The notes beneath the pieces were generated by a model, which saw only the letters and a list, made by a program, of their open reading frames with translations, was not told the origin of the DNA and made no database searches. DNA of 64,000 nucleotides from Hemiscyllium ocellatum (lineage: Eukaryota). A program made the translations under genes and the position numbers. This document shows positions 14,441 to 61,993 of the stretch, in pieces; the stretch's first letter is position 1; each line of letters begins with the position of its first letter. Where the stretch lies: assembly GCF_020745735.1 (NCBI RefSeq), contig NC_083407.1, positions 93,549,857 to 93,613,856 on the forward strand, given 5' to 3'.

Positions 14441-17400
14441 ATGAAAGCCTTCCTCCTCACCATTGCTGCAGTGCAGATTCTCCACTGCTCAGGTAGGTCC
14501 CAGAGAGAGAGAGCAGCTCCTCATCAACCAACGAGTTATTGCCAATGAGGTTCACTCACTCAGATATCACCGAGGTGGAAAAATAATTTGCTGAAGAGTT
14601 CTGAAATGTTTTGCACAACTTATCCTTTTCTCTACTGACAGGAATACCGAGCCCTAAGGATGCTCTGAGAGCATCAGTTATAAAACTGAACGAAATCACC
14701 GAGACCAGCAATCTGTGTGGGATAACCAGGAGAAGGGTGAAGAATGTAAGTGTGGCCTGTTCTCAAACTGTTTCACTCTCTAAATTCCACAAGAATATTA
14801 CTGAATGCAGTTTGGTACTGATTATTAAATAGGAGCAGAATGTTATATTAAAGGTAAATGTAATGTCATACAGACCCAGAGCAACATAAGGCTGGTCTCT
14901 CTTTAGACAGATGAGTCTGGTTATTGCTTAACCTGATGACCACTTACCTCAGACGAGGGGTGAGGTCAAGGAGGTGTGACCTTCATGTTGACCTCAGTAG
15001 TGCGGGAATTGAACCCATGTTGTTGGCATCACTTGGACTCACAAGCCAGCCATCTAGCCAATTGAGTGCTTTTTTACATTCACACTGATGGGTGAATCCC
15101 CCCTGAGTAAGAACACCAGATATCATCAGGCACTAATGAACCATTTCTCTTCTCATTAGATTCAACACACAGGGAAATTGTCATACAATGTGGACTTAAC
15201 ATTCTCCGTGAAAGAAACCGTCTGCTCCAAAAATTCTGGACTGGAATTTGATGATCCCAGCTGTCACTTCCGTCTCAGAAAGGCTGCTGTAAGTTCTAAA
15301 TTGTTTTGTCACATTCGAATACTCATCGATACACAGGTATATCATTGAATGAGCCATTTATTCTGTGCTACATTTTAGAAAGGGCCATGTGATTATTTTT
15401 AATCAATCCATTCAGAGATGTTATGAATTGGGAATATGCACCTGTTATATTACGGGAAGGAGCCATGTATGTTGCATTCCATCGTACAAAGCAATATGTT
15501 TAATGAGTATTGTTATAAAGAGTATTGACTGTAAATATAATCAATTTTGTTATGACAGGAGAGAGGTTTGTGCAAAAGCCATGTTGCATATTTTGCTGAT
15601 GAGGTTGTCGACATTGATGTAGAGTGTCGAGGGTTGAAGACAGTTGACAGCAACAGTGACTCATCAGAATCGAGTGAAAACAGTGTAGAGGTAACCTCAC
15701 AATTTTACCCATCAAGGATAATGGGAGTTCTATCATTTCAGAAATTTACATTTCTCATTGCGTTAATTATTTCAATGTTAATATCTCATTATAGGTCAAA
15801 ACCCAGCCAAAACCCATGTCAATTGAGGAATCACCAAAGGTGAGTAGAAACTTGAAATTTTTGTCAGATTATTTTCTTGTTGTGCAGAATTATCAAAAAA
15901 TACTAATAAATTCTAGTGTGTAAATATGCCAGAAAGGAGAATGAGATGTTAATTTGTTCTGGTTTGAGATTTGGCAGGACAGCGGGTGTTGGTGTAAATG
16001 AGGGAGAAATCCAATGTAGGGGAAGCGTTTATTCTTCCCTGAGGATATTATCAGCTGCACGTTCACATGACGGTAGATAAAAATGTTGGCATTAGGAGGA
16101 CACAATCTCTCACTAATGATAGACATTATTTATTGGTGTGACTTAGAGGGGACCTGCAGATACATCACAATAAGTTCCAACTGTTGGAGGATAGTCTGCA
16201 TTATTATAACCATCAACATTACAGCTCCACTGTCTTAGAACTGGATTGCGAGGGATTGCTCCACTGCAATACAGTGTCAAAGAATCATGACTCTGAAATT
16301 CAAAATGTTATCATCTCCTTAGTTATAATCTGATATCATTTAAAGCTTTTGTTTGGAAATGATTGTACAGCTCAAAATTATTTGCACAGTGCTAAATACA
16401 TAACTTAAATATTTTATTCCAGGTAAAAAGCGAGTCAACAGAACTATCTCTTGAGGACTCTCCAGATGTAAGTATTTTACATTGGATGTTTATCTCTTTC
16501 TCTTCATCCTCATTAAACGAGACAGGGAATTATGGGTCATGCCATGAGGCAAGTTGAGGGCAGTCTCAAGAACTACCTCAGGAATTGATTCCACACTGGT
16601 GCAGGAATTGATTCCACACTGTTGGCATTATTCTGTGTCAGACTGTGAACACTGAGCTAACTGATACGTCACTGGATAATTATTGACCGCCAATAGCCTG
16701 TTGAAACCTGGGTTCATCACTGTAGAGTCTAAAGAATTGATGCATTGAATACCCACCTAAAGGTTGTGGTTGAGGGGATTCTGATACTCAGTTCTTGTTG
16801 GGTTGTTCATGGATTTGTTAGATTAATGCCTAGTAGCTCTTAGTTACTTCTTAGAATTTTTTAGATTCACAGAAAACACTTGCCACTGACAAGAACTGTG
16901 ATTACAAGACAAGCACAACTGATGGTTTCATGAGGGTGTTACATTCTCCTCATCATTTCTTTATGTGGAAAGGTCAATACAACTTCCAGTAGTTTAACCA
17001 TCAACATTACTGTCCCACTGCCCAAGAATTGGTTAATTATTGCTGTCTTCACTTTCGGAGAATAGGAGTGAATATTCCATTACTGAGGTTGTACTATTAC
17101 CCATCCCGGAAGAATGTGGTGGTTGGGGCAAATCACTGAGTGAATTGAGGTGGTAACACACCTTCTCCCATCTCACCATCTCAGTAATTAGTGCTGGATA
17201 AATAGCTCCCTCTCCATTTGCCAGCAATTGTGGACCTGAAGTGGTCAATTACTGGCCACAAGGGCCTCAACATGCCACCTTCCCCCTCCCAATCAGCTAC
17301 CTTCCTGGCAGGTTAGAAAAGTTGGCAACTGGGAAACCCAAGTGACCTGATGCCTGATTGGGGAGGCCTCCAATTGCTTCACTCTGGGGACAAGTAACAA

Positions 17401-26054: not shown

Positions 26055-26320
26055 AACTTTAACAACTGGTGTCAGCCCAGACAATGTATTGGATATTAGC
26101 ACCCTTGAGTGCTGCTGTCAGTGCCGTAATGTTTAGACTGATTATAATCTAAAAAAATGAATTAACAGACTCTTACATGGATTCATGCAGTTTTTGAGCA
26201 AAGTACAATGTAACTGAGCAATTGCAAATTCACCCACAAACTTATATGTGTATGTGTGTGAGTGCGAGTATGTGTGTATGCGCCTGTGTGTGTGGTGGGG
26301 GGAGTGGGGTTGTGAGTGCC

Positions 26321-26325
<5 letters not shown>

Positions 26326-26392
<67 letters not shown>
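26326..26392. repeat. (TG)n microsatellite, mirrored by (CA)n at about 26912-26945
   Basis: Direct reading; both lie within the PLE arms. Confidence 0.95.
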
Positions 26393-26395
<3 letters not shown>

Positions 26396-26908: not shown

Positions 26909-26951
<43 letters not shown>

Positions 26952-31809: not shown

Positions 31810-32076
31810 ATTCATAATTTCACATACTGAGAAATAATCTGATCTCACCAAATCTAAACATGATGACGGTACTGGGAGGAAGCTCTGCCCATATTTGAGC
31901 CACTTGGCAGCAGCTTCCCCTGCCCAGGACCAAACTGAGTAAATATGAGTCAGTGTTTGATTGTGGTGAAGGCGCGAGAATATAAAGACTGAACGCAGCA
32001 AGGAAAGGGCAGAGCAAGAGAGAGAAGCAGCTCCTTTACTCTGAGAAAGCAGCCAGCTGATCACACAAGAGGCAGA
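31810..32076 (+). promoter_or_regulatory. Proximal promoter and 5' UTR of paralog 2
   Basis: TATAAA 31981-31986; GTAAATA 31939-31945; TGAGTCA 31946-31952; TGTTTGAT 31954-31961. Confidence 0.75.
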
Positions 32077-35000
32077 ATGAAAGCCTTCCTCCTCACCATT
32101 GCTGCAGTGCAGATTCTCCACTGCTCAGGTAGGTCCCAGAGAGAGAGAGCGGCTCCTCATCAACCAATGATTTATTGCCTCAGATATCAGTGAGGTGTAA
32201 AAATAATGTGCTGAAGAGTTCTGAAATGTTTTGCACAACTTATCCTTTTCTCTACTGACAGGAATACCGAGCCCTAAGGATGCTCTGAGAGCGTCTGTTA
32301 TAAAACTGAACCAAATCACCGAGACCAGCAATCTGTGTGGGATAACCAGGAGAAGGGTGAAGGATGTAAGTGTATCCTGATCTCAGTCTGTATCACTCTG
32401 TGAACTGTACAAGAGTATTACTGAGTGGAGAGTGACACAGATATAATATGCAGAATATTATATTACTCTCACACTTCTAGGTGAATAAGTACATTAGATA
32501 GAGTAGAAAATGTGTTGCTGGAAAAGCGCAGCAGGTCAGGCAGCATCCAAGAAGCAGGAGAATCGACGTTTCGGGCATGAGCCCTTCTTCAGGAATGCCC
32601 AAAACGTCGATTCTCCTGCTCCTTCTCCTGCTGCACTTTTCCAGCAACACATTTTCAGCTCTGATCTCCAGCATCTGCAGTCCTCACTTTCTCCATTAGA
32701 TAGAGTAGGTCACTAATGAACTGCTTCCTCTCATTAGATTCATCGCACAGGAAAATTGTCATACAATGTGGATTTAACATTCTCTGTGAAAGAAACTGTC
32801 TGCTCCAAGAATTCTGGACTGGAATTTGATGATCCCAGCTGCAACTTCCGTCCCAGAAAGTCTGCTGTAAGTTCTAAATTACATTGTCACACTCAAACCA
32901 TCATGTGTGTATGACAAAGGGTTGAGTTACATCTAGAGTTGAGTTACACATATTGAGTTACATCTAGAAAAACCTTGTGCATTTGAATTCTATATCATAG
33001 ATAAAACTGTTTATAGTGAGATATATGGTAGAAAGTGCATTGTGCACTGCTTTGTAGTATGGCAATATTGAGTGTAATTTTAATTAAATCTGTTTTGACA
33101 GGAGAAAGGCTTTTGCAAAAGTCGCATTGAATATTATGCTGATGAGGTTATCAACGTTGATGTGGAGTGTCAAGGACTGAAGACATTTGACAGGAAAAGT
33201 GGATCATTTGAGTCAAGTGAAAACAGTGTTGAGGTAAACTCAACATTATATACAACAAGATACTGGAATATTTTACATTTCAGATTGTGTAGCATTGAGT
33301 TTCTGCGCTGATTATAGAAATGTTAATATTTTCTTACAGGTCAAAACTAAATCAAAAGGCAAAGAGATGAAGAAATCATTGAAAGTAAGTAGAAACTGGG
33401 AATTCTGTAAAAGTAATTTCTTCCTGGTCCAAATTATCTACAAAACTGCATCAAATCCAGAATCCAGATATAATACATGAGTTAGTCATGACTGACAGTT
33501 AATTCCAATAATTTGTACTTTTACCAAAATTGCAGACTGAATATCTAAGAGTATTTAGGAAGGGCAGACTAAAATAAAAAAGAATTGGGATGGGATTGTT
33601 ACTAAAATATGGAATCATTGCAATTGTGAGAAAGTGTGAGTACAGAAAATGTTGATGTGGAATCTATCTAGGTGGAACTAAGAATCTACAAAGAACAGAA
33701 AATTATTAGTGGGTGTTGTCTGCAGACCTGCAAACAAAATGATGAGATAGGTGTTGATATTAAAGCAAAAGTTAGGGATGCCTGCAACAAAAAGGGTGAG
33801 AGATTAATTGTGGCTGGCTTTAATCAACATATAGTTTGGTCAAACCAATTTAGCACTATTGATGCGGTGGGTGAACTCAGAATGAGGAGTGAATTGCCAA
33901 TTTACTTCAGTCTGAAAAATTGTAGGTGGGGTGTCTGATGTTTGAAATCACATACACATAAAGGGTCTTGCCCTTCCATGAAGGTATAGTCAGTAGAATA
34001 TCCACAGCTCTAGGTAAGATGGCATCAGGAGAACTATCTTTCTTACATTATCAACAGTAGTAGCTTCTAATTACTGGCACTTCCACTAGGGGACAATGTT
34101 GGGTGGGGGGGGGCACTGCATATTCAATGGAGAATCTCATTCTTCGTTGGTTTACCCATCAACACCAAAGCCCGACTGTTCTAGGATGGGCTCAGTTCTT
34201 GCAGCACTGGAGAACAGGAGCCATTTGGTTCATTCAAGTACTGAATCCCGATTCCAAAATTTACAAGTGCTGTCACTTCCTCAGTTACAATCTGACATAA
34301 TTTAGAACTTACATTTTGAGGTGGTTCTAAAACTCAGGATTTAGAAAGAAAATTAAACATTTAAATCTGAATGTTTTACTCCAGGTAAAAAACAAGTCAA
34401 CAGAAACATCACTTGAGGACTCTCTGGATGTGAGTATCTATATTAGTTATTTACCTTTCTATCTCTTCATGGAGAATCCTCATTATAGTTTATCCATGGG
34501 GTAGGCTGAGGAGGTTGTTCACAAGAACTACCTCAAATGGATCAGGAATTAAGCCCATGTTGTTGGCATTATTCTGCATCAAATTCTTGACAATAAGCTG
34601 ATATACCATCAGATAATTAGCAACCCAACCTGTTGGAATCTGAGTTCAGGTGCATCACAATATAGTCTGAGGATTGTTATTGACTGAATGCCCACCCAGA
34701 GGCAGTAACAGACAAAATCCTGAAGATCATTTACTATTAGGCTGTTCATTTTTGTTTGTGGATTGCTGGGATGATGCTTAATGGATATTAGTAGTTTCCT
34801 AAATCACAGAATTTTCTAGAATCATAGGAAATACTTTCCTGTGACAAGAACTAGAATAGCAGGATGCATAACTGATGGTTTCATGAGGGTAGCATAATTT
34901 ACTGTCTCTTCATGTAACTGAAACACAGATACATTGAAAATATTAGCAGAAGTAGGCCACTCAGCCCTTTCAGTACAACCTGCCTCAATCTCAACTCCAT

Positions 35001-36639
35001 GTTCTCAGTCTCCTGTTAGCACTTAGCCTCTGGAAATCTATCTATTGATTTCTTAAGTATGTGAGGTGACATCTCTCTACTGCCTGCTGTGGTTAGGAAT
35101 TCCACAGCTTTACAATCCCCTGAATGAAGAGATTTTTCCTCATCTCAGCTCAGAATAGCCGATCTCATCTCCTGAGACTGTGATCCCTTGTTTTGGACCT
35201 CCCCAGTCCTGAGAAACATTATTCCTATTTCCAGTCTCTCCAAGCAGTCAGAAAGGTATTTGCTTAATGAATTTCTCTCTCATTCTTCCAAACTCCAGTG
35301 AATATATGTCCAGTCGACCTAAGCTTTACTCATATGACAAACTTGCCATCTCAGGAATCACTGTCATGAACCTTCACTGCACTCCCTCAAGGCCAAGTAT
35401 ATCTCCTTAGGTAAAGAGACTAAGACTGCACCCAACACTCTAACTGTGCTCTTACCAAACTATAGTAAAACTTCCTTGCTCCTGTACTTAAACCCTCTTG
35501 CAAAGAAGGCCGACAAATCATTTGCCTTTCTAAATGATTGTATGTTTGCTTTCAATGATTGGTTTACAAGGATAGCTTGGTCTCTTTGTTCATCAAGTTT
35601 TCCCAATCTATCATAACTTAAAAAAAATTGGCTAATTTTTTTAAGAGGTTAGCTTAGTAAACTGCATTTGCCTTGCCTTACCTTCCCACTCACTCAATTT
35701 GTTAAAATCACCCTGAAGTGCCTATTCCTCCTCCCCACTACTCACATTTTTGTTAGCAAATTTGGAAATATTGCATTTGAATCCCTCATCAAATCATTGA
35801 TAGATATTGTAAAAATCTAGGAACCTAATCAAAAGGATAGTAGGAAAGATAATACTTACTAGTTTCTGTGACAGTGTCAACAAAATACACAACAACCAGT
35901 GGAGAATCTCACTCTCCCTTAGCTTATCATCAATAGCACAGTTCCAGTGTCCCAGGGTTGATTAAGTATTGCTGCATTTAAGAACACAAGACTCCATTCC
36001 AGCACTGAGTCACTAAATCGCAACTCTGAAATTCAAAGCGTTGTCACTTTTCATTTATAATCTAATACCATTTAATCCTCTTGTTTACAGACTATTCTAT
36101 AAATCAAGTTTATTTATTAAGTGCTGAACGTTTCAATCATAATTTTCCAATCTAGGTGGAAAGCAAGTCTACAGAAATGTCACAAGAGGATTCCCTAAAT
36201 GTGAGTATAATCAGTGATTTTGTGTCAGATGCTTATTAATAAAATGAAGTGTGATATATTTCTGAATTTTTATTAAACTATATGTGTCTAGAGAATAAAA
36301 AGTTCAAGAGTTAACATATCCTCATTGGTGAAATCAGTGGTTTAAAGATAATCCGATAACTCAATATTAGTTATGAAATGTTTCACTAATTATCCATGGT
36401 AAATAGATAAATCTGAATATTTTAATACAGGTGGATAGTAAATCAACAGAGATATCCTTTGAAGTGTCTTCAAACGTGAGTATAAATTGAGATTTTATGA
36501 CAAAACATTGCCTCGTGATCATGATCGTCAATGAAATAAAATACTGAACTCAATCTGAACCTAGTCCATCTGAAAATGACCATTATCTTCATTCTGTTCA
36601 TTCCAGGAACACCATGATGATTCAAGAGCCCGACACTAA
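32077..36639 (+). CDS. spp2: SPP2-like paralog 2; 9 coding exons, 209 aa
   Basis: Exons: 32077-32128, 32262-32365 (…KLNQITETSNLCGITRRRVKD), 32738-32866 (IHRTGKLSYNVDLTFSVKETVCSKNSGLEFDDPSCNFRPRKSA), 33102-33233 (EKGFCKSRIEYYADEVINVDVECQGLKTFDRKSGSFESSENSVE), 33340-33384 (VKTKSKGKEMKKSLK), 34385-34429 (VKNKSTETSLEDSLD), 36156-36200 (VESKSTEMSQEDSLN), 36431-36475 (VDSKSTEISFEVSSN), 36607-36639 (EHHDDSRARH*). Exon sizes and phases are the same as paralog 1, splice sites are canonical and there are no internal stops. Confidence 0.88.
32507..32693. mobile_element. Palindromic Penelope pLTR insertion in intron 2 of paralog 2
   Basis: Inverted arms; 15-bp TSD cattagatagagtag at 32492-32506 and 32694-32708; hammerhead core at 32561-32596 on the minus strand. 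Confidence 0.82.
34940..35820 (-). mobile_element. Decayed CR1/L2-type LINE 3' part in intron 6 of paralog 2
   Basis: Reverse-strand similarity to the LINE 3' ends elsewhere in the window. Confidence 0.65.
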
Positions 36640-47364: not shown

Positions 47365-47447
47365 TAACATAAAATGGCTGACCATGGTTTTTAGTTGACA
47401 TAAAAATGGCTGACCATGGTTTTTAGTTGACATAAAAACGGCTGAAG
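47365..47447. repeat. About 33-bp tandem repeat, about 2.5 copies
   Basis: Unit acataaaaatggctgaccatggtttttagttg. Confidence 0.8.
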
Positions 47448-49421: not shown

Positions 49422-52254
49422 GATCTTTTTTGCCACTTGTTTAATATAAGTTCATTTACAATAAAGTTTTGTTTACTCGTTTATCAATGGAACCTGATTA
49501 GTTTCTTTTGCCTCAGATAGCAGTCAAAGTCAAAAACCATCCTAGTGATTAAAATGGTTGTTTTAATATTGGTAAATGCTTGTGGAATAGCAAGGCTTTA
49601 TTGCCAGTGCACCCAGTGCTATCAGTGTGACAGGCTCCAGGCTCATAAATGAAACTTCTCCCAAACTTTGAATCATAAATGAAACTTTAAAAATGAATTA
49701 CCATTTCTTCCCATCCAAAGCACAAAATATATTTAAAAAAGAAATTAAATTCAGAATATACATTGTTTTAACATTCAGATTCAAAGAAATTTGATCAAGT
49801 TTCATCAAAAATTCTAACAATAGTGCTCTCTCTTATGAATTCAGATTTCAAAACTCCATCAACACAGTTTTACACTCATCTGTAGAAATCATTAATGGAA
49901 TTGTCCACAGAGTCACCTGGAAACCGAGCCTTTCTGTTAAATGTTGTTCGTTCAATACTTTTATTTGTTCCGAATTGAAGTAATTGTCAAAAGCTTTTCC
50001 AGCATCTTCCAAAGGATTGGTACTCATTTTAATATTCTGACAATTTAAAATATCATCTGTTATTGAACCTACTGGAAATCTAATTGTTCAGCTTCAGATT
50101 TCGTCTTTAAGTTTGAGGTCTTTGTCTTAAGAATACCACCTCTTTCTACCCTTGGTATCCTTTGACACATAGAGTCATAGAGATGTACAGCATGGAAACA
50201 GATATCCTAAACTAACCTAGTCCCATTTGCCAGCACTTGGCCCATATCCATCTAAACCCTTCCTATTCATTTACCCATCCAGATACCTTTTAAATGTTGT
50301 AATTGTACCAGCCTCCACCACTTCCTCTGGCAGCTTACTTCATACATGCAACACCTTTGTGTGAAAAAGTTGCCCCTTAGGTTCCTTTTAAATCTTTCTG
50401 CTCTCACCTTAAACTTATGCCGTCTAACTCTGGACTCCCCACCCCAGGGAAAAGACCTTGTTTATTTACCCTATCCATGTCCCTCATGATTTCATAAACC
50501 TCTATACTCTCATCTGATTGTGATCAGTTATCAATTTTAAGCCCAGCCAGCCATTCTAATTCCTCCTTTCTATCAATTTCCACTGAACCCACTGTACCTC
50601 ATCTTTCATTGGACTTTGTAAAGATCCTTTTTAATGGTGAAGCTAAATGCAAAGTACCTTAGTACCTCAGTCATGCTCTCTTCCTACATGTGTAAATCCC
50701 TTTTTTGGTCATTAATTGATCCTACTCAAAGGAACCTTGCTGAACAGGTCACCAGATGAAGCAACAATAGAGATATCAAGTAGCAACTCTTCTACAGCTG
50801 TAGCCAAACAATGAGGCTCCACAGCCATTGTGAATCCTTTCAGACCAGCTGAACATCCTGGACTTTACAGACATTTGATCCACAGCATACATGACTACTG
50901 TATTGTCTAGAAGATGTGAGCAAGACGGTAAAGAAAATGGAAAGGGTGAGTTTATGTAGCTTTAGTTTTTGGTTATTATTTTCAAAACCATAGGAAGTAC
51001 AAGAAGAAGATTGATAGAAGAGGCCACAGGCAATTATTTGCCAGGACGTTAAAGCAGGAAGAGCCCCTGGAAACCTCCTTACTTGCTCCAGTAGCCTTCC
51101 AGACATTCACCATTCAAAAGCTGTGTGGGAATTTGGATAAGAATTCACCACTGGATAAAATATCGAACACAGTAATCGGAAAGTACCATGCAGGAGGTTG
51201 GCTTTGACTCCTAGGCTTCTGGAGGCATGAATATGCCTGGAGAGACACCATTGAGTGAAATATTTATGAGGGAATACCATTGTTTTGACAAATCTTGTCT
51301 TAAAGTATCTCCATGTTAGAATATATTTCCTCTCATACACTTGGATCAATGACAAACCTTTGTACGTCATTGCTTCTATGTTAAAGATAGCTTGTGTGGA
51401 GGAATTCCCACTGGAAATCTCAATTAAGGTTCCAGGGGTATTTAACAAACCTTTCCCAAAAAGGATAATGATGAGGTCAACGCTAATGAAGCATGAAATC
51501 CTGAATATGCAGCATTGGAAAACCAGAGCCGTATTGCATTTTTCCTTTCCTTATTCTTTGATTGGGTATGGGCCTCACTATTTGGCACCCACCTTCAACA
51601 ATATATGAACAGAGCAGCTTGTTAGCCTTTTTCAGAGTGAAGTTAAGAGTCAACTGTTGGTCTGGAGTCACATGTATGGCAGACTAGGTAATAATGGCAG
51701 ATTTATTTTTCCCAAAAGGACATTCATGAACCAAATGTGGTTTTCACTTCAATTTGCAGTAACAGACATTGACAGAAAGGTATAATATGCAGGAAGTTGG
51801 CATGGTTTCCTTGGGCTTCAGAGACAAGACAAAGATTCACTGAAAAGGCTTGTAAAAACATACCATTGTCTTTCTGGGTCTGGCCTTAGGGGATTTCCAT
51901 GGGGGCCCATATTTCATCTCGACTCACCTGGACCCATGACAGGAGAACCTCCCTTTTGCAATGCCGTATTGAGACTTCTGATGAATTATCAAAATGAAGA
52001 ATGATTGAGCAAAGGAAAATGAAGCCTGAAATTCCAAATGACAGTCTGGGCAAATATCTGCTAAGTTCTTGAAAAATTACACCATGGCCTTGTCAAGTTT
52101 CCGCTGAAATGGTTACCACTGCCTGGAGTATCAGACACTGACAGAAATATCTCTCATTTAAGTGCATTCAGTACAGGAAGAGACTCTCAGGCAGAAATAA
52201 TGGGATTTCCGATAACTAGATTTCTCCACATTCTCAAATTTTCACAGTGAGGCT

Positions 52255-53510
52255 TATTATCGGATCATTGTTTCTTAAAATTGTAATCCACTAGCATACT
52301 CAATGGAAAATCTCAATTTGGATAAAATGGCTGAATTTTGGACAGATCCATTTCCTCCGCATTCTGAACGGTGGACAAATTAAGTAACACTCTTCTATTT
52401 GCCCACTAGCCTATAATAATCTTCATTGGCTACATTCAATCATTCATCTTCACTTTGAAAATCAATCACAAGCAATATTCATATTGAGAAGAGGTGGGAT
52501 GTAAATATTGAATGCCAAATGAAACAGATAGCAGGAATGCACTGGCAAAGCAACCTTCACATATGAGATTGATTTAAATATCCTGAAATGGGGAGAGGTT
52601 TGTTCAAGTCTCCTGTCTGGTATAATGTTATCCATTTCAGTGCTTACAGTCTTGTGAGATTCTGTTTTGAATGTTTGAAGTTGTTAATTAAAATCAGTTC
52701 TCACTGAATTTGGCAGCTTTTCAATTTCAGAACTTCCTTCTCCTTTTGAACTACTAAATGCTTGGCTTCTCTCGATTTCTCACTTCCCTCTCAGCCTCCT
52801 TGTTCTCCTCCTACACTGAACTCAAGCCTCCTCGTGGCGTCATGCAGCCGGGAAGGCAGGAACCTCCAACCGTTGACTTTTCCACAAGTGTTAATAAGCC
52901 CCCATCCCAAAATAAATCTCTGGATGTAGCGCCTACACATGTAGAGTTAAATGGCTTCTGTTGTCAGGAGTAAGTTACAGCTACATAGAAGCTCTGGTAT
53001 TTGCTATGATTTCATTCAATGGTTTCTTTTCAAACCTACTCACTGCCAAAAGATGTTGAATTTGAGGGTTGCCGGTGACGTTAAGACTGCACAAATTAAA
53101 CTTACTGTACCCGGAACATTGAAATGTTCAAGGCAGTTGTGACTCATAAATGACTGACTCTGAGATATTACTAATCACGAAAATCACTGTTAATGATTTA
53201 TTGTTAATAGTAAAATGAAGTATTTGCACAGTGACAGATACTAATTCAGCAAGGCCATTCAAGTCAATTTTTTTTTAGAAAAGATAGAGATAAATTATCT
53301 TCATTTGAAGGTAGCAACTAATACAAACTATTTTAGGTTGGTGCTCAGTTTATGTGGAAATGGAGAATGGTGACTTGATTTGTCCACTGGCCAGATCGAA
53401 GGAGATTAGTTATTCATCTCTGTCTGTGAGGCTGCAATGATGCAGCACAAATCCACAGCCATCTGGGCTGCAAGACATGAGAGACACAAGTTGGCACATG
53501 CCATGAGCTC
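52255..53510 (+). promoter_or_regulatory. Paralogous upstream non-coding block of paralog 3 (core about 52840-53000)
   Basis: Homologous to 28190-29460. Confidence 0.5.
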
Positions 53511-54280
53511 TCGGAATCTTAGAGTCATTGAGTCATAGAGATGTACAGCATGGAAACAGACCCTTCGGACCTACCTGTCCATGCCAACCAGATATCCCAA
53601 CCCAATCTAGTCCCACCTGCCAGCACCAGGCCCATATCCCTCCAAACCCTTTCTATTCATATACCCATCCAAATGCCTCTTAAATGTTGCAATTGGATCA
53701 GCCTCCACCACATCCTCTGGCAGCTTATTCCATACACGTACCACACTCTGAGTGAAAAAGTTGCCCCTTAGGTCTCTTTTATATCTTTCCCCTCTTACCC
53801 TAAGCCTATGCCCTCTAGTTCTGGACTCCCCAACCCCAGGGAAAAGACTTTGTCTATTTATCCTATCCATGCCCCTCATAATTTTGTAAACTTCTATAAG
53901 GTCACCCCTCAGCCTCCAACGCTCCAGGGAAAACAGCCACAGGCTGTTCAGCCTCTCCCTGTAGCTCAGGTCCTCCAACCCTGGGAACATCCTTGTAAAT
54001 CTTTTGTGAACCATTTCAAGTTTCTCAACATCTTTCCGATAAGAAGGAGACCAGAATTGCACACAATATTCCAACAGTGGCCTAACCAATGTCCTGTACA
54101 GCTACAACATGACCTCCCAACTCCTGTAGTCAATACTCTGACCAATAAAGGAAAGCATGCCAAATGCCGCCTTCACTATCCTATCTACCTGCGACCCCAC
54201 TTTCAAGGAGCTATGAACCTGCACTCCAAGGTCTCTTTGTTCAGCAACACTCCCTAAGATCTTACCATTAAGTGTATAAG

Positions 54281-54887
54281 GTTTGTGCGAAGATTTGTAG
54301 CTCGGGTGCTCGTTGTTGTGGTTCTGTTCGCCGAGCTGGAAGTTTTTGTTGCAAACGTTTCGTCCCCTGGCTTGGAGACATCATCAGTGCTCTGGAGCCT
54401 CCTGCGAAATGCTTCTTTGATGTTTCTTCCGGTATTTATAGTGGTCTGTCCTTGCCGCTTCCGGGTGTCAGTTTCAGCTGTCCGCTGTAGTGGTATTTTT
54501 ACTGTTGGTATATTGGGTCCAGGTCGAAACGACACGACCAGCTATCCCTAGTAGCCACACACTCAGACAACAAGCAACATGAATTCGACTGGGAAAACAC
54601 TACTATCATAGGTCAAGCCAGACAGAGAACAGCCAGGGAATTCCTAGAGGCATGGCATTCATCCACAAACTCCATCAACAAACACATCGACCTGGACCCA
54701 ATATACCAACCACTACAGCGGACAGCTGAAACTGACACCCGGAAGCGGCAAGGACAGACCACTATAAATACCAGAAGAAACATCAAAGAAGCGCTTCGCA
54801 GGAGGCTCCAGAGCACTGATGATGTCTCCTAGCCAGGGGACGGAACGTTTGCAACAAAAACTTCCAGCTCGGCGAACAGAACCACAA
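54281..54887. mobile_element. Penelope-like element (third family), inverted structure
   Basis: GIY-YIG C-terminus HEFDWENT…REFLEAWH…SINKHIDL on the plus strand; inverted pLTRs; 15-bp TSD cattaagtgtataag at 54266-54280 and 54888-54902. Confidence 0.85.
54351..54390 (-). ncRNA. Minimal hammerhead ribozyme motif (PLE-associated)
   Basis: GCA-CUGAUGA-U-GUCUCC(AAGCCA)GGGGAC-GAA-ACGU-U-UGC; the plus-strand mirror near 54813-54852 has GAAA changed to GGAA. Confidence 0.7.
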
Positions 54888-56039
54888 CATTAAGTGTATA
54901 AGTCCTGCTAAGATTTGCTTTCCCAAAACGTAGCACACGCATTTATCTAAATTAAACTCCATCTGTCACTTCTCAGCCTATTGGCCTATCTGATCAAGAT
55001 CCTGTTGTAATCTGAGGTAACTCTCGTCACTGTCCACTACACCTCCAATTTTGGTGTCATCTGCCAACTTATTAACTGGACCTCTTATCACATCCAAATC
55101 ACTATATAAATGATGAAAAGTAGTGGATGCAGCACTGATCCATGTGGCACCCTACTGGTCACAGACCTCCGGTCTGAAAAACAACCCTCTACCACCACCC
55201 TCTGTCTTCTACCTTTGAGCTAGTTCTGTATCCAAATGGCTAGTTCTCCCTGTATTCCATGAGATCTAAGCTTGCTATTCAGTCTCCCATGGGGAACCTT
55301 GTTGAACGTCTTACTGAAGTCCATGTAGATCACATCTACTGCTCTGCCCTCATCAATCTTCTTTGTTACTTCCTCAAAAAACTCAACCAAGTTTGTGAGA
55401 CATGATTTCCCACACACAAAGCCATGTTCTCTATCCCTAATCAGTCCTTGCCTTTCCAAATACATGTACATCCTGTCCCTCAGGATTCCCTCCAACAACT
55501 TACCCACCACCGACGTCAGGCTCACTGGTCTATAGTTCCCTGGCTTGTCCTTACCGCCCTTCTTAAACAGTGGCACCACGTTTGCCAACCTCCAGTTTTC
55601 CGGCACCTCACCTGTGACTATCGATGATACAAATATCTCAGCAAGAGGCCCAGCAATCACTTCTCTAGCTTCCCACAGAGTTCTCGGGTACACCTGATCA
55701 GGTCCTGGGGATTTATCCACCTTTAACCGTTTCAAGACATCTAGCACTTCATCCTCTGTAATCTGGACATTTTGTAAGATGTCACCATCTATTTCCCTAC
55801 AGTCTATATCTTCCATATCCTTTTCCACAGTAAATACTGATGCAAAATATTCATTTAGTATCTCCCCTATTTTCTGTGGCTCCACACAAAGGCCGCCTTG
55901 CTGATCTTTGAGGGGGCCTATTCTCTCCCTAGTTACCCTTTTCTCCTTAATATATTTGTAAAAACCCTTTGGATTCTCCTTAATTCTATTTGCCAAAGCT
56001 ATCTCATGTCCCCGTTTTGCCCTGTATTAGGTTAAGTCT

Positions 56040-58450
56040 TGCTCAAATGAGACATCCTGTGGTTTGTGCCATTACTTAGAGTTTGTCATTGAATATAATT
56101 TATTGTGTAAAACTATTGAGTATGAGCTAATAATAGCATTGTAAGGGAAATAGACTTTTGTTGAACAGGGCTGATAATGAGATAAACAAGGAAATTTGCT
56201 CGAAAATAAAAAGCTGATAAAATCAAGTGAATTCCAACAAAAGAGAAATAAAAGGATAGATACAAAAATAGATTAGTTGAAGAGCTAAAAAGGGAAATGC
56301 ATTCATGAGTCATTGAACATTCTGATTCACCCTATTAAGAACATAGATTCACATGCTAGCCTTCTTAAGCATTCAACACCCATGTGTTCTTGGTGTAACA
56401 CGGTCACAATATTTTGGCATAGTGTTTTTGATACTGGGACTTGTTTCCCCTTGAAAATAATTTGCCACAGTATACAACATTCATCTCTATCTAACCAAAA
56501 TGAATTAATCTTCTCACATATCTCTTTAATGGGATCCTCATCATCGCATAATGATCTTTTATAGCACTTGCAGTTGCTCACCTTAGACAGTTTTTAATTG
56601 TATTTAATTCTATTCCTTGGATGCTGCCTGACCTGCTGCGCATTAACCAGCAACACATTTTCAACAGTTTTTAATTGTAGCTGTTCATAATACCTCTGAC
56701 CAAAGCATAATAAATCAAGCTCAGCACATGCTCAACTATATCGCCATTAATGTTTTAATCAAGAGGGATATCTTTGCCTAATGTGTAGGTTGGGTCATCC
56801 ATTCCTCAGAAAAGATATAGTCATCCTGATAACTGGTTTATATCTCAATTCAAAATCATTCACTTGGAGATGCTCAACTTATTCAATTGATTCATGTGTG
56901 ATCTGTTCTGTCACTGTGGACATCATTTAAACCTCATGAGTTGTGACTAGACAAATATTTGTGCATTCTGGAGTGCTGCCACAACTGGATCACTGACGTC
57001 TAAGGGGAGAAGATATGAGAGAGCAAAGATAAGCTTGTGTATTTGCACTGGAGTGTGATTCTGCGAATGTACAGAATTTGTGAAACACTCTACATTATGA
57101 GACAGTTTGTTGTAGGCTGTACAATGGAGCACCCAAAGCTAAGGTACATATCTTTCAAGAAGCGTTCTGGCTAAATGTTGACATTTGCTCCTGAATCGAT
57201 CTTCGCTTTATTTGGGTCTTGCCACATTGCCTCATACTGTTGAAATGGTGGATGAAATTAACAAGATGGAAAATTTGATCATCTTCTGAAATTGCCTTTC
57301 ACTTGATTGAATCCGAATCCATTGATGCGTTTGCATTTGTTCATCATCTTACCACTTGCCTTGTCGCCAGTCTTCTGGCGTCAATAGCCTTTTGGGATTG
57401 CTGTCTGCATGTCATGAGTTGGAGTCTGTTAACCCTGGTCAAGAAATTTGCAACTCTTCTGAATCTTTCTGATAGTATAGAGAAAAGACTGGATGTGTTC
57501 ATTCTTTAAAGTTGCTCCTTGGCAACACCGGACAAAACTTGTAGAGTTATTTTCCAGAGATTATGTACCACTTGATGTATAAATAGAAATACATTCATTG
57601 TTCGAACTGTGCAATTCAGTTGGTGGATACCCACTCCATAATGAGATTTCTGTTATCAATGATTCAGATTTTAAAATGTTAAATTGTAACTTTAAGGCCT
57701 GTGTCTCTGGATTTGAGTCAATTAATTGTATTGTATGTTAAAAATTTTCCTTCTTTACTTGTTGTACTGAGACAGCATGCTATTTTTGTATTAACATTCA
57801 TGAACAAAATGCTCTAGGCTCCTGGTCCACTGGGTTCCCGCTTAAAAAAAAGGCCTGCTGCTGATCTTTTACTTTTTATTGAAGCAACCTTAGAAATTAT
57901 TTTGTCTGGAAAGGGCTTACATTTTGATCAAAATAAATTAGCTCTCTCTTGTTCATAGTTAATGCTGTATCCACAAATCAGTGCAGTTGTCTATATTCAC
58001 AAAAACAGATAGTAAAAAATCTTTCCTTTTGACCAAATTCTCCATTGTCTTTCTGGTGTTCAATTAGCTTTTCAAATATCTGCCATCAATATATTGAAGC
58101 CTTTTGTCGACAGACATTGCTGTTACCTTGGTCAGAACTTGTCTCCAACAGGATGGTTTTACCTGATATTCCCCTGCTTGTGGCAACTCCACTTCATAAG
58201 AAACTTGCTGTGGATATCCTGATATTGAAACTTCCAACAGATATTTATTATAGTAGCCCATTATATAGGAATATTATATTTCTTATGCAGTGCATCTGGA
58301 CTAATATTGAACTATTATGTTCCAACAGAGGACCATGCTTCCCACAGAGTCCACGTGATATGACGTAAGATGGAGGATAAGATCTTGATACTTTCAGATC
58401 ACATGCTATGTGCAATGATGATGTCATGAACACGTCTCTTAAGCATACAC
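56040..58450 (-). mobile_element. Gypsy/Ty3 LTR-retrotransposon remnant
   Basis: RDE…IFKGKQV.V…LHQEHMGVE..RRLA.ES integrase zinc-binding remnant (56327-56581); CGKH knuckle-like remnant near 58340; heavily decayed. Confidence 0.6.
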
Positions 58451-58554
58451 TGACATATTGATTGTGAGACAGATTATGTCAGCAGAGAAAGAAAACAGAT
58501 GAATAGGAAGAAAAGGATTAGTTGATGTGGGAAACGAGACATAGGATCAAGAAT

Positions 58555-58900
58555 AGAATCCCTACATTGTAGAAGCAAGCCTTTCAGCCCATCAAGGCTA
58601 CATTAACCCCCCTCAATGAGCATCCCACTCAGACTCACCACATTACCCTATCCCTGTAACCCTGCATTCCCCATGGCTAACCCACCTAGCCTGCACATCC
58701 CTGAACACTATGGGCAATTTAGCATAGCCAATCCACCTAACCTGCACATCTTTAGACTGTAGGAAGAAACCAGAACACCCGAAGGAAACCCATGTAGACA
58801 CGGGAGAATGTGCAAACTCGACACAGTCGCCTGAAGGTGGAGTTGTACTTGGGTCCCTGATGTTGTAAAGCAGTAGTGCTAACCACTGAGCCACCGTGCT
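58555..58900 (-). mobile_element. HE1-type SINE upstream of paralog 3
   Basis: Head and body similarity. Confidence 0.8.
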
Positions 58901-59409
58901 GATTTATGAAGAAAAATTATACTTTAAACTTGACATTTTGAAGATCTCTAAAACCAATTGACAACCTGCAGGAATAATACTCCGCCTTTTAATATGCTTC
59001 ATTTCTGAGAGACAGGAATTGGTATTGCAGTCACAAATCTCACATTATTAAATAAAGTTTGCATTATTAACAATGAGTCTAAAGTCTCCGTGGTGCATTT
59101 AATGGCCAAATGACAATCAATTCCAGAAAATTGTTTTTTACAAAAATCTGAAGATTGAGAGTGGGAAAAAGAATAGATGATAATCAATAAGTTCCAGAGA
59201 TTCACAAAATATGTATCCCCATCACCTGAACTAATGATGTAATTTATTCATCAGTAATGGTGTGCCATTATTTTTCAAATAAAATCTGAGCCAATAAAAT
59301 GTGAGCCAGAGATAGACCATTTTCATGTGTTTACAGCAAGGTTAGCCTTGTAAATATTAGAGAACTAACATAGTTTGTGCAAATTATAGAAGATAATCTC
59401 CTCTCCTCT

Positions 59410-59681
59410 GTCAGTTGATTATTTCACATTCTGAGAAATAATTTCTGATCTCAGCAAATCTAAACATGATTACGATACTGGGAGGAAGCTCTGCCCATTT
59501 TGAGCCACTTGGCAGCAGCTTCCCCTGCCCAGGACCAAACTGAGTAAATATGAGTCAGTGTTTGATTGAGGTGGAGGCGCGAGAATATAAAGACTGAACA
59601 CAGCAAGGAAAGGGCAGAGCAAGAGAGAGAAGCAGCTCCTTTACTCTGAGAAAGCAGCCAGCTGATCACACAAGAGGCAGA
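59410..59681 (+). promoter_or_regulatory. Proximal promoter and 5' UTR of paralog 3
   Basis: TATAAA 59586-59591; GTAAATA 59544-59550; TGAGTCA 59551-59557; TGTTTGAT 59559-59566; TTCTGAGAA (GAS/STAT-like) 59429-59437. Confidence 0.75.
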
Positions 59682-61993
59682 ATGAAAGCCTTCCTCCTCA
59701 CCATTGCTGCAGTGCAGATTCTCCACTGCTCAGGTAGGTCCCAGAGAGAGAGCGGCTCCTCATCAACCAACGAGTTATTGCCAATGAGGTTCACTCCCTC
59801 AGATATCACCGAGGTGGAAAAATAATTCGCTGAAGTGTTCTGGAATGTTTTGTACAACTTTCCTTTTCTCTATCAACAGGAATACCGAGCCCTAAGGATG
59901 CTCTGAGAGCGTCTGTTATAAAACTGAACCAAATCACCGAGACCAGCAATCTGTGTGGGATAACCAGGAGAAGGGTGAAGGATGTAAGTGTGTCCTGGTG
60001 TCAGTCTGTTTCACTGTCTAAAGTCGATGCGAATATTACTAAGTGGAGAGGGACATGGATCATGAAGCAACATGTTATATTACACGTAGTATGATGGGTG
60101 AATTAGCTCAGAGTAAGAATATCATATACAGTCAGACATTAATGAACTATTTTCTTCTCATTAGATTCATCGCACAGGGAAATTGTCTTACAGCATGGAT
60201 ATAGCATTCTCTGTGAAAGAAACCATCTGCTCCAAGAATTCTGGACTGGAATTTGATGATCCCAGCTGTCACTTCTATCCCAAAAAGACTGCAGTAAGTT
60301 CTGAGTTACATTCTCACACTCAAATACTCATGTGTACAGAGTTCTATCATAGAAAAGTACATGTTCCATCAAAATGTAATTTTAATCAATTCTGCTTTGA
60401 CAGGAGAGAGGTTTGTGCAAAAGCCATGTTGAATATTTTGCCGATGAGGTTGTTGACATTGATGTAGAGTGTCGAGGGTTGAAGACAGTGGACAGCAACA
60501 GTGACTCATCAGAATCAAATGAAAACAGTGTTGAGGTAACTTCACAATTATACATGTTAGGATAATGAGAGTTCTATTACTTCAGATAATTTACAACATA
60601 TTTCATTGGTCTACAGTACTCTAAACATGGAAATATTAATATTTAAATACAGGTCGAAACCAAATCAAAAGAGAAATCAATTGAGAAGTCCTCAAAAGTG
60701 AGTATAAACTAAGAATATTATCTTTTTTTTTGCTGTTGATTAGAATTATCAAAAGATTGCGGAAAATATAATATGCAATAGTTGGAATGGAATGTGAGAC
60801 TTAAATTTGTTTTACTCTGAAATCCTTTGGGTTTGGGTTGGGAGTTTGATGTTGTCCCAAATACAGAGAAAGATGTTTTTCTTCCTTAAGGATGGTATCA
60901 GCTGAATATCTACAGGACTGGGCAGACACAAACAATGGCATTGGGAGAACAGTGTCTCACTACAATAGACAATATTTAATGATCTGTTCTGGAAGCAACC
61001 TGTAGATTCATCACAAAAGATCCGATCAGTGGAGATTCTAATGCTTCATTAGCTCATTCACCAATATTGCAGGCACACCGGACTGATCGGTGCTGCACTG
61101 CAGAACAGGAGGTGTATGATACGAGTCTCCCCAATCCATCATTGAACCACTGACTCTCAACTCCAAAAGTTAAAGTTATAATCTAAAAGCTTTTGTTTGA
61201 AGACGATTCGAAAAATTGAGACTGTTTCCACAATCCTACATACATACGATTAAACTTTTCATTCTAGGTGAAAAAGCATTCAACAGAAGCATCACTCGAA
61301 GACTCTCCCGATGTGAGTATATTGTGGCATTTATGAAAGTGACCTGACAAAATTAAACTGTTGAAACCTGCATTCAACTGCACCTCAACAGATTCTGAGG
61401 CAGAAACAAAAACAGACATTGCTATAGAAGCTCAGCAGGTCTGGCAGCATTTGTGGGGAGGAATCAGAGTTAACGTTTCAGGTTGAGTGACCCTTCCTCA
61501 GACCTGAGGCTGAGCTGAGCCTTCCTAGCTATTTCTATTTTGTTCCTGATTTACAGCATCCACAGTTCTTTCAGTTTTTATTCAGATTCTGAGGCAGCTT
61601 AGTTTTATTCAATTAGGCACAGCTAAAGACTAGAAATGTAAAGATTATATTCTCATATTTATTGTTTAATAAATAATAACTCAAGTGATCCAGTGAAATT
61701 CTTGGTTGAAGGTAGTATGTTTAGTATTACTCAACATCATCGATTCCCAGTAGCAAACAGATAAATCTGAATATTTTAAAACTTTTTTTTTACACAGGAG
61801 CATAGCAAGTCAACAGAAACATCATTCGATGTATCTTCAAATGTGAGTATAAACTGGAAAATTGTCTCAGACCATTCGCTCTCGGTCATGATCATCAACA
61901 ACGATGAAACATTGAATTCAGTCCATCTATAAATGACCATTATCTTCATTCTGTTCATTTCAGGAACTCCATGATTCAAGAGCCCGGCACTAA
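59682..61993 (+). CDS. spp2: SPP2-like paralog 3; 8 coding exons, 193 aa
   Basis: Exons: 59682-59733, 59880-59983, 60165-60293 (IHRTGKLSYSMDIAFSVKETICSKNSGLEFDDPSCHFYPKKTA), 60404-60535 (ERGLCKSHVEYFADEVVDIDVECRGLKTVDSNSDSSESNENSVE), 60653-60697 (VETKSKEKSIEKSSK), 61268-61312 (VKKHSTEASLEDSPD), 61798-61842 (EHSKSTETSFDVSSN), 61964-61993 (ELHDSRARH*). Only three 45-nt micro-exons; frame intact. Confidence 0.88.
61404..61582. mobile_element. Short Penelope-pLTR-like insertion in intron 6 of paralog 3
   Basis: 15-bp TSD cagattctgaggcag at 61389-61403 and 61583-61597; minus-strand CUGAGGA…GAAACGUU core at about 61469-61501. Confidence 0.7.

What the first reader, a model, noticed from the sequence alone, without database searches (positions are those of the whole stretch)
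14441..61993. Tandem shark SPP2-like family with an SCPP/casein-style phospho-repeat tail built from 45-nt phase-0 micro-exons
Seen: three intact paralogs. After the Spp24 cystatin-fold domain, exon 4 ends in S-V-E and is followed by 3-4 exons of exactly 45 nt, all phase 0. Their consensus is about V-K-S-K-S-T-E-T-S-L-E-D-S-x-N/D, with Ser at i, i+4 and i+8. The C-terminal regions carry 10, 10 and 9 direct S-x-E motifs, one of them (S-N|E) formed across the last splice junction. Established: S-x-E is the FAM20C consensus. Short phase-0 exons carrying S-x-E are the hallmark of SCPP/SIBLING/casein genes, which derive from SPARCL1, not from cystatins. Mammalian SPP2 is single-copy without such an array, and cartilaginous fishes were reported to lack the canonical bony-fish SCPP cluster. 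Inference: this lineage may have convergently evolved an expandable family of calcium-phosphate-binding phosphoproteins from SPP2. Possible roles are mineral chaperone in plasma or matrix protein of tesserae, teeth or denticles. I cannot tell whether this has already been described.
Basis: partly seen in the sequence, partly recalled or inferred. Interest (0 to 1): 0.92.

Follow-up and report, generated by a model that had tools for sequence, protein, structure and literature searches.

The report
Shark SPP2 genes with phospho-repeat tails
Three neighbouring epaulette-shark genes for a secreted, mineral-related protein (SPP2) carry tails built from repeated 45-base mini-exons rich in phosphorylation sites; the gene family and its likely role in cartilage mineralisation were published in 2026, so only the mini-exon construction is new detail.

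Summary
The window holds three intact + strand genes. Each has exons of 52/104/129/132 nt, then 4, 4 and 3 phase-0 exons of 45 nt and a short last exon. The tails carry 10, 10 and 9 S-x-E motifs. The products are RefSeq proteins of Hemiscyllium ocellatum (LOC132817553-55, "secreted phosphoprotein 24-like").

Debiais-Thibaud et al. (BMC Biol 2026, PMC13188829) list these three loci. They describe the tandem spp2 expansion in cartilaginous fishes, the S-x-E accumulation as putative Fam20C sites, expression in mineralising chondrocytes, and the SCPP parallel.

That paper never mentions exons. New here:
- The 45-nt cassette duplicates together with its splice signals.
- spp2.2 has a single copy; elasmobranch spp2.3 has three to five in the loci mapped, and protein lengths imply up to about seven.
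- The elephant shark has one 465-nt exon with an internal 45-nt-period repeat instead.
- In the paralogs just upstream of the window, the first cassette is 40 nt, not 45. The resulting frameshift turns the acidic tail into a conserved basic one.
- The 5' halves look homogenised by gene conversion.
- A ~200-nt promoter with an AP-1-type site is conserved from sharks to chimaera.

I could not test whether bony-vertebrate SPP2 has the same cassette.

The parts
14240..14440 (+). Gene A proximal promoter and 5'UTR: TGAGTCA at 14310-14316, TATAAAG at 14345-14351, CAGCTG at 14418-14423
   Evidence: conserved with catshark, skate and elephant-shark spp2.2/2.3
14441..14492 (+). Gene A exon 1 (52 nt, signal peptide; ends in phase 1)
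14642..14745 (+). Gene A exon 2 (104 nt, cystatin-like domain)
15160..15288 (+). Gene A exon 3 (129 nt, cystatin-like domain, Cys 1-2)
   Evidence: Pfam Spp-24 E 2.4e-5
15559..15690 (+). Gene A exon 4 (132 nt, Cys 3-4, Ser cluster, ends S-V-E)
15795..15839 (+). Gene A cassette m0 (45 nt, phase 0)
16423..16467 (+). Gene A cassette m1 (45 nt, phase 0)
17838..17882 (+). Gene A cassette m2 (45 nt). RefSeq X1 starts it at 17829 (54 nt); RefSeq X2 skips it.
18130..18174 (+). Gene A cassette m3 (45 nt, phase 0)
18307..18339 (+). Gene A last coding exon (33 nt including the stop)
31876..32076 (+). Gene B proximal promoter and 5'UTR: TGAGTCA at 31946-31952, TATAAAG at 31981-31987
32077..32128 (+). Gene B exon 1
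32262..32365 (+). Gene B exon 2
32738..32866 (+). Gene B exon 3
33102..33233 (+). Gene B exon 4
33340..33384 (+). Gene B cassette m0 (45 nt; Lys-rich, no S-x-E)
34385..34429 (+). Gene B cassette m1 (45 nt)
36156..36200 (+). Gene B cassette m2 (45 nt)
36431..36475 (+). Gene B cassette m3 (45 nt)
36607..36639 (+). Gene B last coding exon (33 nt)
59481..59681 (+). Gene C proximal promoter and 5'UTR: TGAGTCA at 59551-59557, TATAAAG at 59586-59592
59682..59733 (+). Gene C exon 1
59880..59983 (+). Gene C exon 2
60165..60293 (+). Gene C exon 3
   Evidence: Pfam Spp-24 E 8.1e-6
60404..60535 (+). Gene C exon 4
60653..60697 (+). Gene C cassette m0 (45 nt)
61268..61312 (+). Gene C cassette m1 (45 nt)
61798..61842 (+). 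Gene C cassette m3 (45 nt; gene C has no m2)
61964..61993 (+). Gene C last coding exon (30 nt)

Best explanation
These are three tandem members of the chondrichthyan spp2.3 clade in Hemiscyllium ocellatum (LOC132817553, -554, -555).

Shown here:
- Each gene encodes a signal peptide and a cystatin-like Spp-24 domain with four conserved cysteines.
- This is followed by a roughly 90-residue acidic tail that the structure prediction leaves unstructured.
- The tail is assembled from symmetric (phase 0-0) 45-nt cassette exons, each contributing two canonical S-x-E sites plus an S-x-S.
- The cassettes arose by tandem duplication of an exon together with about 25 nt of intron on each side. Because they are symmetric, copies can be gained, lost or skipped without breaking the reading frame.
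- Divergence patterns suggest that the 5' halves of the paralogs (promoter to exon 4) are kept alike by gene conversion, while the tails diverge.

Inferred:
- The proteins are secreted by mineralising chondrocytes.
- They are multiply phosphorylated on the S-x-E sites by the Golgi kinase Fam20C.
- They bind calcium-phosphate mineral in the cartilage matrix through the phospho-tail, controlling nucleation or growth.
- The cystatin-like domain may also bind BMP/TGF-beta ligands, as in mammalian spp24.
For: Identity:
- 100% matches to XP_060684041.1 and XP_060684042.1. XP_060684039.1 differs from my gene A model only by a 9-nt acceptor choice.
- The same loci appear in Table S14 of PMC13188829.
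- A, B and C sit inside the spp2.3 clade, separated from spp2.2 with 100/99 support.

Fold:
- In the AlphaFold2 model, residues 21-125 are confident and show a helix plus four strands. Residues 126-209 have pLDDT below 35.
- The top nine Swiss-Prot structural matches are all SPP24.

Cassettes:
- 11 of 11 are 45 nt, phase 0 and flanked by AG/GT.
- Ser 5, 9 and 13 are nearly invariant.
- dN/dS is 0.17-0.48.
- m1-m3 are more conserved than their flanking introns.
- Flanking intron bases are shared among non-orthologous units.
- 45-nt exons also occur in catshark spp2.3 and spp2.2 and in skate spp2.3 and spp2.2.
- Skate spp2.2 transcripts from five RNA-seq runs carry the cassette spliced in.
- Tail lengths of 144 homologs form a 15-aa ladder: 49 have length mod 15 = 14.

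S-x-E enrichment: P<=5e-4.

Gene conversion: dS is 0.16-0.23 for exons 1-4 against 0.52-1.05 for the cassettes. Exon 1 and its upstream 120 nt are 97-100% identical among A, B and C.

Function: catshark spp2.2/2.3 reach TPM 260-2700 in cartilage and about 0 in liver. In situ signal lies in mineralising chondrocytes. Fam20C and S-x-E are discussed.
Against: - There is no RNA evidence from this species for any cassette. The RefSeq models are predictions, and some catshark 'isoforms' are chimeras that splice into the next gene copy.
- Cassette m0 is no better conserved than its flanking introns. In gene B it has no S-x-E motif.
- No phosphorylation or mineral-binding data exist for any chondrichthyan spp2.
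- Expression is extrapolated from catshark and ray.
- The direction of the effect on mineral, promoting or inhibiting, is unknown. The published authors leave it open too.
Confidence: 0.72

Rival explanations
1. The proteins act mainly as inhibitors of mineral growth. They would keep uncalcified cartilage and the joints between tesserae free of mineral, as hyperphosphorylated osteopontin does, rather than acting as nucleators or scaffold proteins. This is a variant of the main explanation, not an alternative identity.
For: The tail reaches 11-12 S-x-E sites per 100 residues. That is well above the 1.7-5.1 per 100 residues reported for Sparc-L and Scpp. The published authors raise this possibility, and the poorly mineralised elephant shark has the most S-x-E sites.
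Against: Catshark transcripts lie in chondrocytes enclosed in mineralising matrix, co-expressed with col10a1.4. Copy number rises with the degree of mineralisation across species.
Confidence: 0.3
2. They are circulating mineral chaperones, as mammalian SPP2 and fetuin-A are in calciprotein particles. They would be made in a visceral organ and delivered by blood.
For: This is the established role of mammalian SPP2 as summarised. The cystatin-like domain and Ser cluster are conserved.
Against: No catshark spp2 gene is expressed in liver or blood (TPM 0-2.3), while spp2.2/2.3 are cartilage-specific.
Confidence: 0.08
3. The main activity is BMP/TGF-beta binding by the cystatin-like domain. The tail would be only a tuneable, protease-sensitive spacer.
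For: Mammalian spp24 binds BMP-2 and TGF-beta, and its effect depends on cleavage state (PMC3753320 abstract). The domain is under purifying selection (dN/dS 0.32-0.41).
Against: S-x-E positions in the tail are non-random and nearly invariant across units. The unit is conserved in sharks and skates.
Confidence: 0.15
4. The 45-nt exons are prediction artefacts or dead exon relics, and the real protein ends soon after exon 4.
For: There is no transcript evidence for this species. m0 shows no excess conservation. Gnomon isoforms can be chimeric.
Against: All 11 units keep open frames, AG/GT sites, strong donors (GTGAGT or GTAAGT) and dN/dS below 0.5. Exon maps in other loci show the same units: 3 to 5 cassettes in the spp2.3 genes mapped and one in each spp2.2. 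The spp2.2 cassette is present in assembled mRNAs. The last exon, E-x-H-D-D-S-R-x-R-H, is conserved from spp2.2 to spp2.3.
Confidence: 0.02

Closest known systems
Catshark spp2.3s1-s7 / chondrichthyan spp2 family (Debiais-Thibaud et al., BMC Biol 2026, PMC13188829)
   Same: Same clade. Same domain order: signal peptide, cystatin-like domain, Ser stretch, many S-x-E motifs. Same tandem arrangement. The three window loci are in that paper's sequence table.
   Different: Nothing differs in kind. The paper does not treat exon structure, splicing, frameshifted tails or the promoter: the words exon, intron, isoform, splic-, frameshift and promoter each occur 0 times.
Bony-vertebrate SPP2 (spp24)
   Same: Spp-24 cystatin-like domain with four Cys, a Ser cluster right after the last Cys, and the nearest predicted fold. 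The human gene also has several small exons after exon 4.
   Different: Single copy, expressed in liver, with an Arg-rich rather than S-x-E-repeat tail. I could not determine the sizes and phases of its tail exons.
SCPP genes (osteichthyan cluster; elasmobranch scpp, PMC9122587)
   Same: Secreted acidic proteins with S-x-E Fam20C sites and mostly phase-0 introns. Expansion by local tandem duplication, with gene conversion among copies. Use in mineralised tissue.
   Different: SCPPs derive from the 5' exons of sparc-L and share its signal peptide. The genes here derive from a cystatin-superfamily gene, keep a folded domain, and have a phase-1 first intron.
Caseins (mammalian SCPP members)
   Same: From general knowledge, not tested here: short symmetric exons encode phosphoseryl clusters and have been duplicated and skipped.
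   Different: Different ancestry, tissue and repeat sequence.
Cathelicidins
   Same: Cystatin-like pro-domain; exon 3 gives a weak Pfam match and there are structural matches. The basic-tailed spp2.3 paralogs next to the window resemble the layout of a cathelin domain followed by a cationic C-terminal peptide.
   Different: The three window genes have acidic tails. The basic-tailed catshark paralogs are cartilage-expressed, not known to be immune genes.

Membership tests
Spp-24 / SPP2 (Pfam PF07448) | Cystatin-like Spp-24 domain recognised by the family profile | tested here: met
   Exon 3 alone scores 24.8 and 26.4 bits against a cutoff of 26 (E 2.4e-5 and 8.1e-6). Proteins identical to genes B and C sit in clusters whose representatives carry PF07448.
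Spp-24 / SPP2 (Pfam PF07448) | Four conserved cysteines forming two disulfide pairs in the domain | tested here: met
   C74, C87, C100 and C118 are invariant in a 40-sequence alignment. They align with the human and chicken cysteines in the published alignment.
Spp-24 / SPP2 (Pfam PF07448) | N-terminal secretion signal | tested here: inconclusive
   There is a hydrophobic stretch of about 18 residues ending C-S-G, encoded by exon 1, which is modelled as a helix. No signal-peptide predictor was available.
Spp-24 / SPP2 (Pfam PF07448) | Fold closest to known SPP24 rather than fetuin, kininogen or cathelicidin | tested here: met
   Foldseek ranks 1-9 are all Swiss-Prot SPP24 (E 2e-9 to 2e-6). Fetuin-A, kininogen and cathelicidins follow at E>=1e-4.
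Spp-24 / SPP2 (Pfam PF07448) | Conserved locus (sh3bp4/arl4c ... nme9/vps8) | not tested
   The window contains only the three genes and LINE fragments. Synteny is reported for other species in PMC13188829.
Chondrichthyan spp2.3 clade | Groups with catshark spp2.3s1-7 and elephant-shark spp2 to the exclusion of spp2.2 | tested here: met
   In the maximum-likelihood tree of the first 140 residues, the spp2.2 and spp2.3 groups are split with 100/99 support and A, B and C fall inside spp2.3. spp2.1 and spp2.Like sequences were not in my sample.
SCPP gene family | Origin from sparc-L/sparc-L1 5' exons with shared exon structure and signal peptide | tested here: not met
   Exons 1-4 are SPP2-type (52/104/129/132 nt, cystatin-like domain) in all chondrichthyan loci mapped. 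The family is defined by structure shared with sparc-L.
SCPP gene family | Introns within the coding region predominantly phase 0; S-x-E sites | tested here: met
   All introns after the first are phase 0. The tails hold 9-10 S-x-E motifs. This is a resemblance in design only.
Fam20C substrates | S-x-E/pS motif in a protein that passes through the secretory pathway | tested here: met
Fam20C substrates | Demonstrated phosphorylation of those serines | not testable with these tools
   This needs phosphoproteomics or a kinase assay.

The most novel reading that the evidence does not exclude
The unit of evolution of the chondrichthyan SPP2 tail is a symmetric 45-nt cassette exon that carries its own splice signals. 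I found no description of this in the literature.

- spp2.2 has one copy. Elasmobranch spp2.3 has three to five in the loci mapped, and protein lengths imply up to about seven.
- The holocephalan has lost it as separate exons and instead holds a 45-nt-period minisatellite inside one exon.
- In a conserved group of paralogs the first cassette is 40 nt, 5 nt shorter, so the following cassette is read in another frame and the acidic phospho-tail becomes a strongly basic tail.
- The cassette may predate cartilaginous fishes, because human SPP2 has two small exons at the same position.

If so, SCPP-like exon modularity arose independently on a cystatin-family scaffold.
Probability: 0.55. Interest if true: 0.45.

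Novelty: already known. Interest (0 to 1): 0.3.

Why it matters
The main message is that cartilaginous fishes expanded SPP2 into a tandem family of S-x-E-rich secreted proteins for cartilage mineralisation, in parallel to the bony-fish SCPPs. This message is already in the literature and includes these exact loci.

The exon-level view adds a concrete mechanism for how the tail grows and shrinks: duplication or loss of a frame-neutral cassette together with its splice sites. It also shows how a sister paralog obtained the opposite charge through a frameshift.

It gives experimenters defined modules to delete or multiply. It also provides a short conserved promoter to test for chondrocyte-specific expression.

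Tried and rejected
- Reaching a bony-vertebrate or lamprey SPP2 locus to read its tail exons. Two profile searches of the large protein collection returned only chondrichthyan proteins among the 120 rows shown. Putting a 315-aa sequence first did not narrow the length window as I had hoped. The exhaustive representative search with exon 3 found chondrichthyan SPP2 and, weakly, mammalian cathelicidin fusions. The ancestral-cassette question therefore rests only on the published human exon counts and amplicon sizes.
- Transcript proof for spp2.3 cassettes. No Logan transcript contigs carry spp2.3 proteins; only skate spp2.2 has them. The catshark in situ probes that span the cassettes were synthesised from predicted sequence, so they are not evidence of splicing.
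- RefSeq isoforms differing by 15 aa as evidence for alternative splicing. This was partly rejected, because catshark X1 and X2 models borrow cassettes from the next gene copy across 22-24 kb introns.
- Other copies in the window. I checked whether the window hides further SPP2 copies or pseudogenes. tblastn finds only the three. The long ORFs elsewhere are LINE endonuclease and reverse-transcriptase fragments.
- Spliced proteins were never typed into tools. Stored identical RefSeq proteins were used instead.

Full report
**What is in the window.** A scan for open 45-nt stretches bounded by AG and GT found a set of Ser/Glu-rich units in three places on the + strand. tblastn with the upstream exons showed exactly three paralogous loci. 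Reading the junctions gave complete models.
- Gene A: 14441-18339, 209 aa.
- Gene B: 32077-36639, 209 aa.
- Gene C: 59682-61993, 193 aa.
- Each has exons of 52, 104, 129 and 132 nt. These are followed by four (A, B) or three (C) exons of exactly 45 nt and a last exon of 33, 33 or 30 nt.
- Intron 1 is phase 1. All other introns are phase 0.
- Every junction is AG/GT, and the cassette donors are GTGAGT or GTAAGT.
- The tails contain 10, 10 and 9 S-x-E motifs, and S-N|E spans the last junction.

**More than chance.**
- Shuffling the residues of each tail gives 2.6-4.1 S-x-E motifs on average. The observed counts are reached in at most 0.05% of 20,000 shuffles.
- Across the 11 cassettes, Ser at positions 5, 9 and 13 is present in 10, 10 and 11 units. 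Glu is at position 7 in 9 units, and Glu or Asp at position 11 in 10 units.
- dN/dS between paralogs is 0.32-0.41 for exons 1-4 and 0.17-0.48 for the cassettes.
- Cassettes m1-m3 are mostly 73-84% identical between paralogs (one pair, m3 A-B, is 64%), against 53-74% for 120 nt of flanking intron. m0 shows no such excess.

**Identity.**
- Exon 3 alone matches Pfam Spp-24.
- An exhaustive profile search with exon 3 retrieved chondrichthyan proteins. A profile search of the larger collection returned over 130 "secreted phosphoprotein 24-like" proteins from sharks, rays and the elephant shark, all carrying PF07448.
- Cluster look-up and BLAST show that gene B is 100% XP_060684041.1 and gene C is 100% XP_060684042.1 of Hemiscyllium ocellatum.
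- Gene A is XP_060684039.1 except that RefSeq isoform X1 starts cassette m2 nine bases earlier (17829, 54 nt). Isoform X2 skips m2.
- An AlphaFold2 model of the gene B product has a confident helix-plus-four-strand domain (residues 21-125) and an unstructured tail with pLDDT below 35.
- Its nine best Swiss-Prot structural matches are all SPP24. Fetuin-A, kininogen and cathelicidins follow.

**Already published.** Debiais-Thibaud et al. (BMC Biol, April 2026, PMC13188829) report:
- Cartilaginous fishes have tandem spp2 duplicates in four clades.
- spp2.1-2.3 proteins accumulate S-x-E motifs, discussed as Fam20C sites.
- All catshark spp2.2 and spp2.3 genes are strongly expressed in vertebrae, Meckel's cartilage and chondrocranium, within mineralising chondrocytes, and not in liver.
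- The situation parallels the SCPP family.

Their Table S14 lists LOC132817553, -554 and -555 of H. ocellatum chr7, which are the three genes in this window. My tree places A, B and C inside spp2.3, separated from spp2.2 with 100/99 support. Each has a one-to-one ortholog in Chiloscyllium. Their alignment shows that bony-vertebrate and lamprey SPP2 have one Ser cluster after the last Cys and then a non-repetitive tail. The S-x-E array is therefore chondrichthyan-specific.

Elasmobranchs do possess a sparc-L-derived scpp gene. Human SPP2 has 8 exons, 7 of them coding, and coding exons 5 and 6 are small enough to be amplified in 172- and 151-bp products.

**What the paper does not cover.** The words exon, intron, isoform, splic-, frameshift and promoter do not occur in its text. 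A literature search for exon duplication in SPP2 found nothing else. I mapped proteins onto fetched loci with an exact spliced-alignment script.
- Exons 1-3 are 52/104/129 nt in every locus mapped. Exon 4 is 132 nt in every locus except the two spp2.2 genes.
- Skate spp2.3 has four 45-nt exons, plus a fifth unit fused to the last exon.
- Catshark spp2.3s5 has three 45-nt exons.
- Catshark and skate spp2.2 have a 282-nt exon 4, a single 45-nt exon and a 33- or 42-nt last exon.
- The elephant-shark gene has one 465-nt exon 5 that contains a tandem repeat of period 45 nt, built from 15-nt subunits (5.6 copies, 85% matches).
- Five RNA-seq-derived contigs encode the whole skate spp2.2 protein without interruption. 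That cassette is therefore truly spliced.
- Among 144 homologs, tail lengths form a 15-residue ladder of 59, 74, 89 and 104 residues. Length mod 15 equals 14 in 49 of them.
- Within the window, about 25 nt of intron on each side of the cassettes is shared among non-orthologous units. The exon was therefore duplicated together with its splice signals.
- Positional orthologs (m1 with m1, m3 with m3) are closer than neighbours within a gene. The array therefore predates the A/B/C duplications.

**Concerted evolution.**
- Synonymous divergence is 0.16-0.23 for exons 1-4 but 0.52-1.05 for the cassettes.
- Exon 1 and its upstream 120 nt are 97-100% identical among A, B and C.
- In the N-terminal tree, paralogs with very different tails group by species.
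- The simplest reading is gene conversion over the 5' half. This is the pattern reported for shark sparc-L and scpp.

**Mechanism.** The architecture is shown. The function is inferred, by homology with catshark expression and from the Fam20C consensus: secretion by mineralising chondrocytes, Fam20C phosphorylation of two to three serines per cassette, and mineral binding by the phospho-tail. Whether the net effect promotes or restrains mineral is open. S-x-E density in these tails (11-12 per 100 residues) is higher than the 1.7-5.1 per 100 residues reported for Sparc-L and Scpp.

**Limits.**
- There is no transcript evidence from this species.
- RefSeq isoforms are predictions, and some catshark ones are inter-gene chimeras.
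- I could not obtain any bony-vertebrate SPP2 locus. Whether the 45-nt cassette predates cartilaginous fishes remains untested.

Noticed in passing
L010:11591-12664 (H. ocellatum XP_060684037.1, an upstream neighbour in the same cluster as gene A, outside the window); also L012:6896-7750 (catshark spp2.3s1) and L013:5193-6521 (Heptranchias): A conserved group of spp2.3 paralogs has a 40-nt exon where the others have the first 45-nt cassette. The next 45-nt exon is therefore read in another frame. This gives a tail of 31-32 residues with 11-13 Lys/Arg, of the type V-Y-K-R-V-K-Q-I-K-R-L-V. Frame 0 of that exon still reads a relic of the acidic unit, such as V-K-S-K-*-K-E-S-S-L-E-E-F-S-N. Similar basic tails are predicted in eight shark species and one ray (Narcine); the 40-nt exon itself was mapped in three sharks. 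The catshark members are highly expressed in cartilage according to PMC13188829, which does not mention a frameshift.
   Followed up: partly
window 14240-14440, 31876-32076, 59481-59681; L001, L002, L003, L004, L010, L011 upstream of each ATG: About 200 nt upstream of the start codon is conserved among spp2.2 and spp2.3 genes of epaulette shark, catshark, two skates and the elephant shark. An invariant block A-T-G-A-G-T-C-A-G-T-G contains the AP-1-type site TGAGTCA at -131. There is a TATA box at -96 and a CAGCTG box at -23. No function was tested.
   Followed up: partly
window 14441-15690 vs 32077-33233 vs 59682-60535: The 5' halves of the three genes are far more alike at synonymous sites (dS 0.16-0.23) than their tails (dS 0.52-1.05), with 97-100% identity around exon 1. 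This suggests ongoing gene conversion limited to the promoter-to-exon-4 segment.
   Followed up: partly
L001:14201-14665 (Callorhinchus milii spp2): The elephant-shark gene reaches 22 S-x-E motifs through a tandem repeat inside one 465-nt exon (period 45 nt, made of 15-nt subunits encoding roughly E-S-R-E-x), not through separate cassette exons.
   Followed up: partly
window 17829-17837: Two acceptors 9 nt apart precede cassette m2 of gene A (TATAG| and TTACAG|). RefSeq X1 uses the upstream one, adding L-L-Q. The bamboo-shark ortholog is annotated with the 45-nt form.
   Followed up: partly
window 320-928 (+), 7849-10750 (+), 55220-55996 (-): LINE-type retrotransposon remains lie upstream of gene A and between genes B and C. 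There is an apurinic-endonuclease plus reverse-transcriptase ORF pair at 7849-10750, and reverse-transcriptase fragments at the other two sites.
   Followed up: partly
L011:3001-29281 (catshark spp2.3s5 locus): RefSeq isoforms X1 and X2 of this catshark gene join exons 1-5 to cassettes lying 22-24 kb downstream in the next gene copy. Only X3 is a compact single-gene model. Isoform counts in this family therefore overstate alternative splicing.
   Followed up: yes
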